A stretch of 6,387 nucleotides of DNA. Origin: Zygophlyctis sp. KS116. Taxonomy: Eukaryota; Fungi; Chytridiomycota. The stretch is from the NCBI GenBank assembly GCA_054661495.1, contig BAAFSQ010000441.1, forward strand, positions 1 through 6,387, read 5' to 3'. The position numbers were made by a program, and so were the translations under genes. Shown here one piece after another: positions 1 through 6,387 of the stretch. Each line of letters opens with the position of its first letter. Position 1 is the first letter of the stretch. Under the pieces are notes generated by a model. It made no database searches and was not told the origin of the DNA. It saw only the letters and a program-made list of their open reading frames with translations.

Positions 1-35
1 TACGGAATAATACCAGATTTAAATTTCCCGTTGAT

Positions 36-795
36 ATGTCCAAGGTCGGAAGCCTTGATAATATAAACCACACTCCAAAAGGTGGCGATAAAAAAATCTT
101 TGATGAGAAAGTAAAAGTGAATGCATCGCCAAAAGTAAAAAGTCTAGAGGTAAGATGCATATTGAACCTGATAGTAGAATGCTTCTCATTCGCCGGCTGG
201 CGGGAACGTGACGATTCAAACACAAAAACTGACTTTTAAAGAAACTGCTAAACCAAAGGTTGGATCATTCGATAATGCAAATCATTCTCCTTCTAAAGGA
301 GTAATCAGAGTATTTTCCCAAAAACTGGCCTTTCGAGAGAAAGCAGCGCCAAAAGTAGGCTCATTAGGCAATCTTAAGTATGAGCCTACTGGTGGTGATG
401 TATCTATCCCAACTCAAAAATTGAAGTTTAAAGAAACTGCATCTCCAAAAGTAGGATCACTTGATAATGCAGATCATGTTCCTCGTGGAGGAGATTGTAA
501 AATATTCAAACAAAAACTCAAGTTTAAAGAAACTGCATCTCCAAAAGTAGGATCACTTGATAATGCAGATCATGTTCCTCGTGGAGGAGATGTGATCATT
601 CCTGTCCAAAAGTTAAAGTTTAAGCAAACTGCCGCTCCGAAAGTTGGATCAAAGGAAAATCTTAAACATGTCCCGGGCGGAGGAGTCGAAAAGATATTCT
701 CTCAAAAAGTGGATTTCAATGCAAAGGCTCAGCCTAAAGTTCCTAAAGCCAAATTAAGGGATGAAGAATGCGCTGAAGCAGCAGAAAAGTATTAA
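36..795 (+). CDS. Tau/MAP2/MAP4-like microtubule-binding repeat protein, 7 repeats, ~243 aa; join(36..149,178..795)
   Basis: Removing the 28-nt intron 150..177 fuses ORFs 36..239 and 208..795 and restores a complete repeat (KVKSLE|NASHSPAGGNVTIQTQKL). Repeats such as KVGSLDNADHVPRGG and KVGSKENLKHVPGGG match tau repeat cores (KIGSLDNITHVPGGG, KIGSTENLKHQPGGG), and KLTFKETAK resembles tau R' KLTFRENAK. The frame is open from base 3 to ATG36, so the true start could lie upstream of the window. Confidence 0.88.
150..177 (+). other. Spliceosomal intron, 28 nt, phase 0 (GTAAGA...ATAGTAG)
   Basis: Canonical donor; removal restores the frame and the exact 32-aa repeat register. Confidence 0.88.
424..591 (+). 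repeat. Exact 72-bp direct repeat: 424..495 = 520..591
   Basis: aagtttaaagaaactgcatctccaaaagtaggatcacttgataatgcagatcatgttcctcgtggaggagat occurs twice, 96 nt apart, identical even at synonymous positions. Confidence 0.95.
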
Positions 796-875
796 TAATT
801 TATTTATTCCTTGATCGATAACAACTGATAGTCCCCGTGATAGATTAAATCATCTTCCGCTTCTTAATAATTACA

Positions 876-2494
876 ATGATTAAGATGAATTGTGATAAAG
901 GACCTCTGCTTCCAGTGTCTTCTGATAAGTCAAAAAGAGGAAACTTATGGAAAAGCACTATAATGGTTATGCTGGCCGTATTTGCAGTGACTACTGTACT
1001 ACTCTATCCAATGAAAATGATGCATATCTCAACGTACATGCAAAAGTATTTTTCTGAAGAGGAACTTCTGTCAGGCCTAAAGGGGAAGAATAATATTTTG
1101 CCTCATGTCAGAATTAGTCGTGCATACAGTCACTTAGTAGCACTTTATGATATTGCTAAAACGAACTCAAACTCTAGATCTATATTAAATGGATTTAATG
1201 AATCTGCCATGTATGTTGCTAATACGTTGAAAGAAAACACAGACTATGATGTGGAACTTCAACCTTTTAAAATTGATATTTTTTCTGATGTAAAACCACC
1301 AGTCTTGCAAGTCAATGGGAAAGAATATGACGTAGCTACAGTACAGCATTCTGGATCAGGGACGGTTGTTAATGGGGAAATTGTTTTGATTAAGGGAGGT
1401 TGTGATACTTCTGATTACAGTTTGGTAGAACCCCATCATATTCTATTACTGTTTAAGGAAGGGCCATGTGATTATAAGAATATGCTCCAATTAGGAGCTG
1501 ATAGCAATCCATCTGCTATAATGTTGTATACAAATTTACCAGGATCAGGACCAACTTCTGCCTCTTTGAGAAGAGCTGTTCCTCTACCAGTAATTGGGAT
1601 TTCTCATTATGCAGCACTAGATATTTTTGAAATGATGGTTCTAAATCCTGAAAAAGTGCTTGGAAATATAACCACTCTGACTAAATTTACTACTGCAACT
1701 ACACTAAATGTCATTGCTACTACCAAAGAAGGAGATGATTCATCCGTGATTATTGCTGGCTCTCATCTTGATTCTGTTCCTCAAGGACCTGGAATCAATG
1801 ATGACGGTTCTGGTGCATCTGGTACACTTGAAGTAGCTGTTGCCTTTTATAAGTCTGGACTATCAAAAAAGACTCATCAAAAGGTGAAGTTTGCTTTTTG
1901 GTCTGGCGAAGAGTAATTAGATTCTGAAATTATTAATTCTTAGACTTGGTCTACTCGGAAGTAGTCATTACGTTAAGAATTTATTAGCTACAAACAAGAC
2001 TGCATTATCAAATATTAAACTGACATTAGATAACGATATGATTGCATCTCCAAACTTCATTCGTGTATTTTTATAATTCTTATTTATAGGCCGTATATAA
2101 TGGACGTGGAGCAGAGAATCCAGAAATGCGACTCCCTTCTGGAATTATCCAAGACTTGTTCGAAGAATGGTTTTCATCTCGAGGCCTATCAACTGTAACT
2201 GTTCCTTTTGACGGCCGCTCAGACTATGGACCATTCCTTGAAGTCGGAATACCATCTGGAGGACTTTTTACTGGAGCCGAGCATGTTAAAACTGAAAAAG
2301 AGGCGAAATTATTTGGAGGTTATGTTGGTGTTCCATATGACCCTTGCTATCATCGAGCCTGCGATACGCTTACAAATCTGAATATGAAAGTTATGAAGCA
2401 AAATGTAGAAGCGATTGCAGTTCTAGTTCATCGATTAGCTCATGAAAAGGATTTAAAAGCTCTTTTAGCTGGAAAAAAGACTCTTTGGCCATAA
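876..2494 (+). CDS. M28 family zinc aminopeptidase with PA domain (aminopeptidase Y / SGAP-like), ~520 aa; join(876..1912,1944..2064,2090..2494)
   Basis: M28 motifs in order: GSHLDSV, GPGINDDGSG, FWSGE|ELGLLGS (rebuilt across the intron), DMIASPN, FDGRSDYGPF, GGLFTGAE, YDPCYH. PA-like segment GCDTSDY...GPCDY...K...AIMLY. N-terminal hydrophobic stretch TIMVMLAVFAVTTVLLY suggests a signal or type II anchor. Spliced length is 1563 nt (521 codons). An alternative start is ATG885. Confidence 0.93.
1913..1943 (+). other. Spliceosomal intron, 31 nt, phase 2 (GTAATT...TCTTAG)
   Basis: Removal converts WSGEE* into WSGEELGLLGSSHYV, the conserved M28 catalytic motif. Confidence 0.93.
2065..2089 (+). 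other. Spliceosomal intron, 25 nt, phase 0 (GTATTT...TTATAG)
   Basis: Removal gives DMIASPNFIR|AVYNG, in frame with ORF 2126..2494. Confidence 0.9.
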
Positions 2495-2503
2495 AATTTT
2501 CCA

Positions 2504-3054
2504 ATGAAAATATTCTCATCTGAGGCAGCATTTGAGCATCCCTGGTCTCTATTTACAAGAGCATTATGGAAAAAGTATCCTAATCCATTCTCATCTCATG
2601 TACTCTCTTGCGATACTTTGGATTGTAGTGTAGATCCGACAACAGGTAACAACCCAATGGTAAATTGTTAGGAATTCTAAAGACTACTCGCCTCATGGTT
2701 AAAAGGGGGAAAATTCCCTCATGGGGATCAATGTTTTTAAACAATCGGGATGCATATGTGATTGAATTCTCAACTGTGGATCCTAAATCACAAACAATGA
2801 CCACAATCACTAGAAATTTATCATATACAAAGCTAATGCTAGTCCAGGAAACTAGTATAATAACATCACAGAATGATACAACCTGTGTAAAAACATTGGC
2901 AGAAATAGTATCTAATACAGGGTCAAGCTGGATAAGATCTAGGATAGAAGGATTTGGATTGTCAAAATTCAAAAAGAACTTTCATACCTCTAGTTTAGGA
3001 GTTTTGCATGTGGTCGAATGTCTCAAATCTAGAGACTCTATTTCTAAAGTATAG
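2504..3054 (+). CDS. PRELI/MSF1-domain mitochondrial intermembrane-space phospholipid transfer protein (Ups1-like), 174 aa; join(2504..2645,2672..3054)
   Basis: Exon 1, missed by the ORF track, reads MKIFSSEAAFEHPWSLFTRALWKKYPNPFSSHVLSCDTLDCSVDPTT(G) with the hallmark KYPNP..HV...D. Exon 2 has ILKTTRLMVKRGKIPSW (cf. Ups1 RTTRLLKKSGKLPTW), E.S.VDP...M...TRNL and RIEGFGLSKF. Confidence 0.92.
2646..2671 (+). other. Spliceosomal intron, 26 nt, phase 1 (GTAACA...TGTTAG)
   Basis: Removal gives VDPTTGILKTTRL, matching the PRELI family pattern. Confidence 0.9.
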
Positions 3055-3055
3055 C

Positions 3056-3086
3056 AACAGACTCTGTTAAACGCGTGTCGTTTAAC
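3056..3086. promoter_or_regulatory. Two overlapping dyad elements in the PRELI-YHM2 spacer; contains ACGCGT (MCB-like)
   Basis: AACAGA-c-TCTGTT (3056..3068) and GTTAAACG-cgtgt-CGTTTAAC (3066..3086) are perfect inverted repeats, with ACGCGT at 3071..3076. The regulatory role is inference only. Confidence 0.35.
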
Positions 3087-3097
3087 CTTTTCAGCAA

Positions 3098-4049
3098 ATG
3101 GTCGCAATAGAGTCAACTTTTAGCTCTGATGGAATTCAAAAGAAACCGATTTCTCTTAATAATTTAGCTATTGGAGCAGCTTTAAATATTTTTGAGGTGA
3201 GCACTCTGGGACAGCCTTTTGAAGTGAGTTTTATATAATTGAGAAAAGGTTGTTAAAACACAAATGGCTGCAGCAAGGAAGCTGACGATGCCTAACGCTA
3301 TCTCAACTATTTGGAGTAGAGGAAGATTTTGGGGATTTTATCAAGGCCTGGTTCCTTGGGGATGGATTGAGGCTTCGACAAAAGGATCAGTATTGCTATT
3401 TGCTACATCAGAGCTGGAATACAATTTAAGAGTTGCAGGATTCTCACCTGGAGAAGCTGGAATTTTGGGAGGTATGGGAGGTGGATTGGCACAAGCGTAT
3501 TCAACAATGGGATTCTGTACTTTTATGAAAACAGTCGAGGTTACTAGATCCAAAGGAGGAGATACTGTTCCTAGATCATCTATACAGATTGCTCGTGAAA
3601 TTTGGTCAAAGGAAGGATTTGCCGGGATTAATAAAGGAGTTAATGCAGTTGCAGTTCGACAAATGACTAATTGGGGTTCAAGATTTGGTTTATCTAGAAT
3701 GGCTGAAGATTTAATTAGAAATTATGTTAATGGGAATGATCCTGAAAAGAAGAATGCAGCTCTATCTTCTTCCCAACGTATTCTTGCATCTGCTATTGGA
3801 GGTGGATTATCATGTTGGAATCAACCGATTGAGGTTATTAGAGTTGAAATGCAATCACAAATAAAATCTCCAGGAAGGCCAGATAAGTTAACAATAGTTT
3901 CTGCGGCTAAATGGATTTATCAAAATAATGGATTAAAAGGGTTCTATCGTGGAGTAACTCCAAGAATTGGACTTGGAATATGGCAAACAGTCTGTATGGT
4001 GTTTGGTGGTGATTACGTCAAGGCATATTTCAATAAAACTTCCAAGTGA
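3098..4049 (+). CDS. YHM2: Mitochondrial citrate/2-oxoglutarate carrier Yhm2 (SLC25 family), 308 aa; join(3098..3223,3249..4049)
   Basis: Exon 1 reads MVAIESTFSSDGIQKKPISLNNLAIGAALNIFEVSTLGQPFE, continuing VVKTQMAA. Yhm2-specific strings: YQGLVPWGWIEASTKG, TMGFCTFMKTVE, GINKGVNAVAVRQMTNWGSRFGLSR, WNQPIEVIRVEMQS, YRGVTPRIGLGIWQTV. Confidence 0.95.
3224..3248 (+). other. Spliceosomal intron, 25 nt, phase 0 (GTGAGT...GAAAAG)
   Basis: Removal restores the carrier signature PxExxKT (QPFE|VVKT). Confidence 0.92.
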
Positions 4050-4075
4050 ATATCTCCGAGTTGTCTGATCTATTC

Positions 4076-6367
4076 ATGCCAAAGATACAAAGCAGTAAGA
4101 CTGAAAGAGAATCCAAGGATTTACCACGGCATAAGAAACCAATCCAATTTAGAGTAGATAATATTCCTTTTGAGTTTCTAAACGGCGAAGAAGAATCAAG
4201 ATCAGTCTTTGTTTCTAAGCACATTAATGCAAAGGGAGAAAAGATTATATTAAGAAGAGATCATCATCATACGGTCAAGAGAGCAGTGATTCAGCCGCAT
4301 ATAATGCCATGGTCTCAATTAAAAAAGGTTATTACCAGAGATTACTTGAGGATACCATATATGGCTAAACAAAAAGATAATGGGGAATCTGTACCGATGC
4401 AGGATTACTTTGATAATCTCGTCAATATTAATTCTGGTCCTTATCCGATAACCGTACCATATGGATTTCAGATATTGAAAAAGATGAAACGAGTTAAAAC
4501 GCCATTTCGTGATGTATTTTACTTACAATCCTCAAATACATTTGCTGCATTGGATTCTCAGGCATTCAATTTCTGGAAAAGTAATAATCGAGTGATGGAA
4601 GTACCTTTAATACGCACTGGAGCAAACGGCACGAATCAAAATCTGACCGGAATAACCATTTGGACATATATTGATCAATATCAAATAAATGTTGTTGCCA
4701 TGAAAAACCTGCAAATTAAAATCTTGGATTCTCATTTTATGGAATTAAGTTCGACATTAACTTCAAAACCAATTCTTTGTTTTGAATTCTCAAGTAGAAA
4801 AAATGAGCTGATTACAGGAGAGGTGGGATCTATCAAGTTTTGGACTATTAAAGTGAAAAAAATCAATTCAAAGTTATCATATTCTCTTGAACAGAGGTTT
4901 GAAATAAGTGACTTTAGTCAAGGGGAATGGATAAACTGTTTAAAGTACGATCCTTCATTCAATCGCCTTTTTGTAGGCTGTGATAACTCTTTGCGGGTTT
5001 ATGAATATGAATCAGGAGACCTATTTGAAACTATTCGTAATGTTCACGACCTGTCTTTTACTTGCCTGGAATATTACGAACCTAGCGAATGCATTATTAC
5101 TGCAGGGAAGGATGGATGTATCAAGATTTGGAATAGAAACAGATTGGTCTACAATTTTACTGAACATTTCAATGCTGTCACAGCGATAACTCTGATGGAA
5201 GAGGCATGTCATGCCCTGCCTGGTTCGATGCCTTTACTTTTGTCATCTTCTTTAGACGGCACTGTTAGAATGTGGAATTTTGATACTGGGCAATGCTTGC
5301 AAAGGTATTTATTTTGGTCTAAATCTTAAGATACGATTTTGGTCCAGCTATTCTTAAAATTCATTTTTTTAAAAAAAATCATGTGTATATTGTTTCCTCG
5401 AATGAAATTTCTATCATTGGAGTCAATACATTTCAATCATTATTTTCTTTTTTCAGGTAAATTTTATATTTTAATGATAAAAAGATCAACACCTTCTACC
5501 ATTGAAAGATTTGAAAATTCAAACAGTGGCAAAAATAGAATAGTAACCGCATGTTCTGATCGAAGCGTCAGAATTATTTCCCCTGTTTCTGGAAATACTG
5601 TTCTCACGCTGTTTCCTTCTGATAAAGACTTAAAATTGAAGCAGATTTCCTATAATATGGACTGCGATAGATTATTTTACCTTTGTACAAATGGAGATAT
5701 TATATTATACGATACTTCCACATCGCCTGGAAGAATAATAGAAATTTTAGAAAGCTCTCAATTTTATCGAATTAATTGCTTGTTTTCAATATCTAACAAT
5801 ATGGACTCGTCTGAATTATCGTGTTTTAGGGGAAATTCTTTTCGATTGGTAGTGGGAACAGATGATGGGCAAATAATAATTCTTTCCAACGGAAAAACGG
5901 AAACATATGTTCAGGTATTTGAAATTATTTATTTTCTAGGCACATTTAGGAAAAGTCCTTCGGATTTTTCATGATAAATCAAGGAGTTGGGTCATATCTG
6001 TCGGCTCCGATGGTGTTATTAAGTCCTGGAAGCTTTTGCTACGATCTTTTGAAACACCTCCAGAACTCACATGCATGCATACGTATACATTCATGTACGA
6101 TTCCGTTTCTCCTCCATGTTTTGGCATATCTTATGCAGCAGGAAAGTTGGCTATATCATTCTATGGATCAGTGATAATAATTGACTTTGTGAACCAGAAT
6201 TGTAAATCCAACATATTTAAACGATTAGTGATTTCTTCCAGTCAATACATAAAAGAAAACAATTTGACTATCACCGATATCGCACGACTTGATACGCTTT
6301 CAATATGGGCAACAGCAAGTGTTGATAACTATGTGAGGATCAGAGACGATTATGGCTCTATTATTCG
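4076..6367 (+). CDS. Large WD40-repeat protein, WDR97/WDR87-like, 3'-partial; join(4076..5304,5331..5456,5485..5914,5940..6367), >737 aa
   Basis: WD repeats: VH...IITAGKDGCIKIWN, EHFNAVT...SSSLDGTVRMWN, TACSDRSVRIISPVSG, QAHLGKV...ISVGSDGVIKSWK, WATASVDNYVRIRD. The exons join in frame through three GT-AG micro-introns. The last exon is open to the window end, with a probable donor at 6368. The WD40 call is firm; the subfamily assignment is from recollected similarity and is tentative. Confidence 0.82.
5305..5330 (+). other. Spliceosomal intron, 26 nt, phase 2 (GTATTT...CTTAAG)
   Basis: Skips the TAA at 5327 and gives GQCLQR|YDFGPAILKIHF in an open 126-nt exon. Confidence 0.78.
5457..5484 (+). 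other. Spliceosomal intron, 28 nt, phase 2 (GTAAAT...AAAAAG)
   Basis: Skips the TAA at 5458 and joins LFSFFR|STPSTIERF into the frame of ORF 5339..5974. Confidence 0.78.
5915..5939 (+). other. Spliceosomal intron, 25 nt, phase 0 (GTATTT...TTCTAG)
   Basis: Gives TYVQ|AHLGKV, the start of a WD repeat, and opens a frame running to the window end. Confidence 0.88.
6202..6228 (+). other. Possible frame-preserving 27-nt intron (GTAAAT...GATTAG)
   Basis: Same donor, size and AT-richness as the other introns, but it is 3n and stop-free, so the reading frame does not require it. Confidence 0.45.
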
Positions 6368-6387
6368 GTTTTTATACACAATAATTA
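6368..6387 (+). other. Probable start of the next intron (GTTTTT...), truncated by the window end
   Basis: GT followed by very AT-rich sequence right after ...DDYGSIIR; no acceptor is visible. Confidence 0.5.

What the first reader, a model, noticed from the sequence alone, without database searches (positions are those of the whole stretch)
36..795. A tau/MAP2/MAP4-type microtubule-binding repeat protein in an apparently fungal (non-animal) genome
Seen: seven 30-32-aa repeats with consensus KVGSLDNxxHxPxGGdxxIxxQKLxFKEtAxP, reproducing the tau KXGS..N..H.PGGG core and the R4/R'-type KLxF[KR]E segment. Established: the MAP2/tau family (Pfam PF00418 Tubulin-binding) is generally treated as animal (tau, MAP2, MAP4, C. 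elegans PTL-1, Drosophila tau), typically with 3-5 repeats, and yeasts lack it. Inference: the neighbours (YHM2, aminopeptidase-Y-like) look fungal, and this gene has the same micro-intron style as they do, so it appears native rather than contamination. It would point to a pre-metazoan opisthokont origin of tau repeats, or to old lateral transfer, perhaps stabilising zoospore cytoplasmic, rootlet or axonemal microtubules. I cannot tell whether such homologues are already reported.
Basis: partly seen in the sequence, partly recalled or inferred. Interest (0 to 1): 0.9.

Follow-up and report, generated by a model that had tools for sequence, protein, structure and literature searches.

The report
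Chytrid fungus tau-like microtubule-binding protein
A freshwater chytrid fungus carries its own gene for a seven-repeat relative of the animal microtubule-binding proteins tau, MAP2 and MAP4; such fungal relatives are already in the databases and have been noted in passing in two papers, and I found no functional test of any of them.

Summary
Observation confirmed. Exons 36-149 and 178-795 (28-nt intron) encode seven PF00418 repeats plus a terminal pseudo-repeat (exon 2 E 6.5e-59). The gene is native to a flagellated chytrid: YHM2 falls among Chytridiomycota, an independent sample bridges 562-3100 in one contig, exon 1 is 70% identical to Spizellomyces SPPG_07449, and the intron sits at the same phase-0 site as in four other chytrids. 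It is not new as a family. Named homologues occur in 8 chytrid genera and in non-flagellated Mucoromycota and Glomeromycota; papers already list Rhizopus (2016) and Batrachochytrium (2024) members. Best mechanism (inferred): a basic, disordered protein that lies along protofilaments, one repeat per tubulin dimer, and stabilises cytoplasmic microtubules under KXGS phosphorylation. A flagellum-specific role is disfavoured. Inheritance from the animal-fungal ancestor is likelier than transfer, but the repeat tree is unresolved. The start codon is uncertain because the contig begins 35 nt upstream with an open frame. No function has been tested. The scan's earlier notes are on this same DNA only.

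The parts
36..149 (+). Exon 1: repeat 1, 30-aa linker and first half of repeat 2 core; ATG at 36 is the probable but unproven start
   Evidence: PF00418 40.3 bits; 70% identical to Spizellomyces SPPG_07449 residues 59-95, ending at that gene's intron
150..177 (+). 28-nt phase-0 GT..AG intron inside repeat 2, two residues after the KXGS serine
   Evidence: Restores the repeat register; same site and phase in Spizellomyces, Powellomyces, Rhizophlyctis and Chytridium. No RNA reads available
178..690 (+). Exon 2, rest of repeat 2 and repeats 3-7 (cores at 256, 352, 448, 544, 640; 96-nt period)
415..591 (+). Recent internal duplication: two near-identical 96-nt units (repeats 5 and 6)
   Evidence: TRF 97% match; unitig depth about 2x over the shared part and 1x over the connector, consistent with exactly two copies
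691..741 (+). Terminal pseudo-repeat, equivalent to tau R'
   Evidence: Weak PF00418 stretch, profile positions 2-17; the same element ends most fungal and animal members
742..795 (+). Short C-terminal tail, acidic in its second half, and stop codon
   Evidence: helix only in the low-confidence single-sequence model
3..35 (+). Stop-free in-frame stretch up to the contig edge: 5' UTR or end of an unseen N-terminal leader
   Evidence: Open frame; does not score as a repeat linker, p about 0.2; other assemblies extend 298-1790 nt further upstream but the letters were not shown

Best explanation
A native, vertically inherited chytrid member of the MAP2/tau family, probably orthologous to Spizellomyces SPPG_07449. 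Shown: seven repeats plus a pseudo-repeat, basic low-complexity composition, conserved contact residues on the repeat and on the host alpha-tubulin. Inferred from animal tau: the disordered chain lies lengthwise on a protofilament ridge, each 30-32-aa repeat spanning one tubulin dimer; the KXGS-x-x-N-x-x-H core binds alpha H12 and beta H11/H12 at the dimer interface, lysine-rich linkers bind acidic tubulin tails. This suppresses depolymerisation and, with little or no projection domain, would pack microtubules closely. Phosphorylation of the KXGS serines by a MARK/Kin1-type kinase would release it. Likely targets are long-lived cytoplasmic microtubules (zoospore arrays, rhizoids, multinucleate sporangium), not the axoneme alone. 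The family dates at least to the common ancestor of chytrids and Mucoromycota and most simply to the animal-fungal ancestor, with loss in yeasts.
For: PF00418 far above cut-off; tau is the only PDB match. K259, S262, N265 and P270 equivalents in 7 of 7 repeats, H268 and G261 in 6 of 7; K259, S262, N265 and H268 are tubulin contacts in 10.1101/2020.11.10.376285, and the host alpha-tubulin keeps D424, A427, D431, E434, R402, E414. Lys 16.5%, net charge +19, FoldIndex -0.05; AlphaFold with 60 sequences gives no fold, pTM 0.15. Host: YHM2 best named hits all chytrids, about 70%, inside Chytridiomycota at SH-aLRT 80; IFT57, dynein heavy-chain N1 at six loci, many chitin synthases, KA1-domain proteins. 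Linkage: one 22.8-kb contig from an independent run spans 562-3100. Shared intron site with four chytrids. Homologues in Chytridiomycota, Mucoromycota, Glomeromycota.
Against: No binding, localisation or expression data for this or, in the papers searched, any fungal member; no RNA run holds the gene. S258 is P in 6 of 7 repeats, V256 is mostly A, K267 is kept in only 2 of 7 and PGGG is strict only once, so affinity may differ. The repeat tree does not recover a fungal clade (unresolved; AU p 0.33). Salpingoeca lacks the family in the Kennard survey, so the ancestral-opisthokont reading needs losses. The N-terminus may be cut off.
Confidence: 0.78

Rival explanations
1. A flagellum-dedicated stabiliser of axonemal, kinetosome or rootlet microtubules in the zoospore.
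For: The host is flagellated and also has a TPPP/p25-alpha gene; the family is in many chytrids and absent from the two yeasts surveyed.
Against: Kept, often with 5-8 repeats, in non-flagellated Mucoromycota and Glomeromycota; absent from flagellated Chlamydomonas, Tetrahymena, Trypanosoma, Naegleria and Salpingoeca in the Kennard survey.
Confidence: 0.1
2. Same microtubule function, but the fungal family came by an ancient lateral transfer between animals and early fungi.
For: Patchy range (animals and early fungi; not seen in Salpingoeca or Dictyostelium); fungal and animal sequences intermix in the unresolved tree.
Against: Presence in three deep fungal lineages puts any transfer at or before their common ancestor; fungal monophyly is not rejected (p-AU 0.33); the window protein has no supported animal sister; no close bacterial or viral carrier found (low-sensitivity scans).
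Confidence: 0.07
3. The repeats fold into a beta-solenoid or functional amyloid, as fungal HET-s-type signalling repeats do, and microtubule binding is secondary.
For: The single-sequence AlphaFold model shows repeating strands (pLDDT 54, pTM 0.49); human tau repeats form cross-beta filaments.
Against: Four of five models score below 50 and the fold vanishes with an alignment (pTM 0.15). The VQIxxK hexapeptides of tau are not present, two linkers carry a proline there, net charge is +19, and no NLR or HeLo gene lies downstream on the contig.
Confidence: 0.03
4. Animal contamination or a chimeric contig end.
For: The gene sits at the contig edge; top-scoring hits by E-value are animal.
Against: Independent contigs bridge repeats to the fungal genes (562-3100 in X4, 562-929 in X3) at similar depth; GC matches the neighbours; intron has the genome's 25-31-nt size and a chytrid-specific position; animal hits rank high partly because they have more repeats.
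Confidence: 0.02

Closest known systems
Spizellomyces punctatus SPPG_07449 (XP_016605092.1) and other chytrid PF00418 proteins (Powellomyces, Rhizophlyctis, Chytridium, Caulochytrium; Batrachochytrium Batde 15669)
   Same: Repeat 1-2 block 70% identical, 30-aa first spacing, same phase-0 intron in repeat 2, terminal pseudo-repeat.
   Different: Seven repeats against three or four in most chytrids; leader of 2 aa against 18-125 aa, if the ATG at 36 is the start.
Mucoromycota and Glomeromycota PF00418 proteins (Rhizopus delemar, Pilobolus, Syncephalastrum, Gigaspora, Rhizophagus, Cetraspora)
   Same: Multi-repeat arrays of mostly 4-8 units with the same core and pseudo-repeat.
   Different: Longer Ser/Thr/Pro-rich leaders, long acidic tails in Glomeromycota; the chytrid intron site is absent in Cetraspora; hosts have no flagellum.
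Vertebrate tau, MAP2 and MAP4; C. elegans PTL-1; Drosophila tau
   Same: KXGS core, N and H contact positions, PxGG turn, R' pseudo-repeat, basic and disordered. Repeats 3-6 score best against the last two vertebrate units (R3-R4 and R4-R' type, 32 aa).
   Different: No projection or proline-rich domain in the visible model; P for S before the KXGS lysine; PGGG mostly PxGG; no VQIINK or VQIVYK hexapeptides.

Membership tests
MAP2/tau family (Pfam PF00418) | Tandem PF00418 repeats above the gathering score | tested here: met
   195.9 bits in exon 2 and 40.3 in exon 1 against a cut-off of 27; searched exon by exon
MAP2/tau family (Pfam PF00418) | KXGS motif in each repeat | tested here: met
   6 of 7 exact; repeat 2 has KVKS and keeps the serine
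MAP2/tau family (Pfam PF00418) | PGGG motif closing each repeat | tested here: inconclusive
   Strict once, PxGG five times, PSKG once; the same relaxation is common in other fungal members
MAP2/tau family (Pfam PF00418) | 31-32-residue period and C-terminal pseudo-repeat | tested here: met
   30 then 32 aa; R'-like element at 691-741
MAP2/tau family (Pfam PF00418) | Basic, intrinsically disordered chain | tested here: met
   Predicted only: net +19, FoldIndex -0.05, pTM 0.15
MAP2/tau family (Pfam PF00418) | N-terminal projection and proline-rich region | tested here: inconclusive
   Absent from the model, but the contig starts 35 nt upstream with an open frame; length varies widely in the family
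MAP2/tau family (Pfam PF00418) | Binds and stabilises microtubules; regulated by KXGS phosphorylation | not testable with these tools
   Indirect only: tubulin contact residues conserved; KA1-domain proteins present
Vertebrate MAPT, MAP2 or MAP4 orthologue | Groups with a vertebrate paralogue | tested here: not met
   Does not join the supported vertebrate tau pair in the tree; the paralogues arose in early vertebrates (PMC4815063)

The most novel reading that the evidence does not exclude
The ATG at 36 is the true start, and compact-genome chytrids make a natural repeats-only tau with no projection or proline-rich domain and no aggregation hexapeptides. It still binds microtubules cooperatively, which would show that the repeat module alone is the ancestral, pre-neuronal function and give a natural non-aggregating comparison for human tau. 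A second compact-genome locus (L019, 11-aa leader, in-frame stop just upstream of its ATG) shows the architecture can be real.
Probability: 0.3. Interest if true: 0.55.

Novelty: new member of a known kind. Interest (0 to 1): 0.3.

Why it matters
The family is usually discussed as neuronal and animal. Its spread across chytrids, Mucoromycota and Glomeromycota, with a conserved intron site among chytrids, means the repeat very likely predates neurons and animals. That much can already be read from databases and two papers, so this gene adds one member from an unplaced chytrid lineage. The open part is function: I found no study of any fungal member. Spizellomyces can be transformed (own knowledge), so its orthologue makes the question of what ancestral tau did directly testable.

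Tried and rejected
Joined 243-aa protein: not searched, folded or assembled; all searches were exon by exon by reference and composition was summed over the exons. Upstream DNA: no overlapping contig in G000; metagenome scan with exon 2 found nothing; exact look-ups blank; the alignment was too variable for a scan. An eighth repeat upstream of the ATG: PSSM score no better than chance, and repeat 1 matches repeat 1 of Spizellomyces. Synteny: neighbours differ in L019, Spizellomyces, Chytridium, Powellomyces and Rhizophlyctis; SNAPC3 lies on another contig in G000. 18S search failed, so the host order is not named. No fold search was run, as both models were too poor. Dehmelt and Halpain 2005 and the paper I sought for the tau-microtubule cryo-EM structure were not held. 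Three unnamed homologue look-ups could not be assigned to a taxon. The sigma-70 scan is irrelevant to a eukaryote and at chance.

Full report
Observation. The window is the whole of contig C441 in a 12.7-Mb, 1175-contig assembly. Bases 36-149 and 178-795 are two exons split by a 28-nt GT..AG intron; the only nearer acceptor opens on a stop. Searched separately, exon 2 has six PF00418 stretches (195.9 bits, E 6.5e-59) and exon 1 has one (40.3 bits; cut-off 27). All PDB matches are tau (best E 6e-28). Repeat cores start at 42, 132, 256, 352, 448, 544 and 640, spaced 30 then 32 residues, followed by an R'-type pseudo-repeat at 691-741 and a short tail. Repeats 5 and 6 are a recent 96-nt duplication (97% by TRF); read depth fits two copies. 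It is the only PF00418 locus found in the assembly.

Is it native? Yes. In an independent run (X4) one 22.8-kb contig spans 562-3100, tying the repeats to the M28 peptidase and PRELI genes; X3 spans 562-929. The six listed strain differences in the gene are four synonymous and two missense, with no stop or frameshift. Named best hits of the neighbouring YHM2 carrier are all chytrids at about 70% identity. It falls in a Chytridiomycota clade on a long, unresolved branch (quick tree, SH-aLRT 80). The genome has IFT57, six dynein heavy-chain N1 loci and many chitin synthases, so the host is a flagellated fungus; holders are mostly freshwater metagenomes. The strongest evidence is gene structure. 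Exon 1 is 70% identical to Spizellomyces SPPG_07449 residues 59-95 and ends exactly where that gene has its intron. The same phase-0 intron, two residues after the KXGS serine, is in repeat 2 of Spizellomyces, Powellomyces and Rhizophlyctis and twice in Chytridium. This supports the intron call and vertical descent within chytrids.

Range of the family. Named homologues were found in Spizellomyces (two paralogues), Powellomyces, Thoreauomyces, Rhizophlyctis, Chytridium, Dinochytrium, Irineochytrium and Caulochytrium; in Bifiguratus, Cokeromyces, Pilobolus, Syncephalastrum and Helicostylum; and in Cetraspora, Gigaspora, Racocetra, Paraglomus, Funneliformis and Rhizophagus. Several are already named microtubule-associated protein in UniRef. 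No Dikarya or non-opisthokont name appeared, but the lists are cut at 120-150 rows and many rows are unnamed, so absence is not shown. Repeat number runs from 3 to 8 in fungi and reaches 13 in a sea urchin, so seven is ordinary. A tree of the last three repeats is unresolved: fungal monophyly is neither recovered nor rejected (p-AU 0.33) and the window protein has no supported animal sister. Close bacterial or viral carriers were not found.

Literature. Suendermann et al. 2016 (PMC4815063) show a Rhizopus delemar homologue in Fig. 2b without discussion. Kennard et al. (10.1101/2024.01.08.573270) list MAP2/Tau in Batrachochytrium, Drosophila and human only, among 19 eukaryotes that include Salpingoeca and two yeasts. 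Searches for a functional or evolutionary study of fungal members found none; the library lacks most subscription papers.

How it probably works. Shown: Lys 16.5%, net charge +19, FoldIndex below zero, and no fold with a 60-sequence alignment (pTM 0.15). The strand-rich single-sequence model is low confidence. In the tau-microtubule ensemble of 10.1101/2020.11.10.376285, K259 and S262 contact alpha-tubulin D424, D431 and E434, V256 contacts A427, and N265 and H268 contact beta-tubulin. The repeats keep K, S and N in all seven and H in six; the host alpha-tubulin keeps all the named residues and both tubulins have acidic tails. Departures are P for S258, A for V256 in most repeats, K267 in only two, and PxGG for PGGG. 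Inferred: the chain runs along a protofilament, one repeat per dimer, bridging dimers and slowing depolymerisation; KXGS phosphorylation by a MARK/Kin1-type kinase releases it (KA1-domain proteins are present; the regulation itself is known from animals only). Retention in non-flagellated coenocytic fungi points to long cytoplasmic microtubules more than to the axoneme.

Open point: the N-terminus. The frame is open from base 3 to the ATG at 36, and the DNA continues upstream in other assemblies that I could not read. All 20 named fungal homologues have leaders of 18 residues or more, which suggests truncation. Against that, bases 3-35 do not resemble a linker (p about 0.2), repeat 1 corresponds to repeat 1 of Spizellomyces, spacers in this genome are short, and an environmental compact-genome locus (L019) encodes a complete 132-aa repeats-only protein with an in-frame stop just before its ATG. 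I put the repeats-only model at about even odds.

Verdict. A real, native chytrid member of the MAP2/tau family. Its existence outside animals is on record though little discussed, and its function is untested. New member of a known kind; interest 0.3.

Noticed in passing
window 150-177, 1913-1943, 2063-2089, 2646-2671, 3224-3248, 5305-5330, 5457-5484, 5915-5939: Very short GT..AG introns of about 25-31 nt in most genes of the window; much shorter than the 34-143 nt introns of the tau-like genes in cultured chytrids.
   Followed up: partly
window 796-4049: Five co-directional genes (tau-like, M28 peptidase, PRELI, YHM2 carrier, WD40 protein) with spacers of about 10-80 nt; the WD40 frame opens right at the YHM2 stop codon.
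   Followed up: no
window 3264-4049: YHM2 sits on a long branch with no close cultured relative (best identity about 72%), so the host looks like an unsampled chytrid lineage common in freshwater metagenomes.
   Followed up: partly
window 4046-6387: Large multi-exon WD40 protein, cut by the contig end, with no family match above a specific cut-off beyond generic WD40 models.
   Followed up: no
L019 1463-1861 (ENA ERZ4203368): Intronless 132-aa repeats-only PF00418 gene between SNAPC3 and a YMC0-like hydrolase with 85- and 60-nt spacers, in another compact, probably fungal genome.
   Followed up: partly
P0117 and P0143: Spizellomyces has two PF00418 paralogues, SPPG_07449 and SPPG_00495, with different architectures.
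   Followed up: no
P0030, P0031, P0101: Three chytrid members carry a shortened 28-30-aa repeat variant in which the KXGS core is replaced by a KVDAR-type motif.
   Followed up: no
G000:C126:20690-21058: The host also has a TPPP/p25-alpha gene, a second microtubule stabiliser shared by animals and flagellated fungi.
   Followed up: no
window 417-439 and 2491-2513: A roughly 61-kb contig in runs X1 and X4 matches two 23-nt AT-rich pieces of the window; probably chance at 90% likeness.
   Followed up: no
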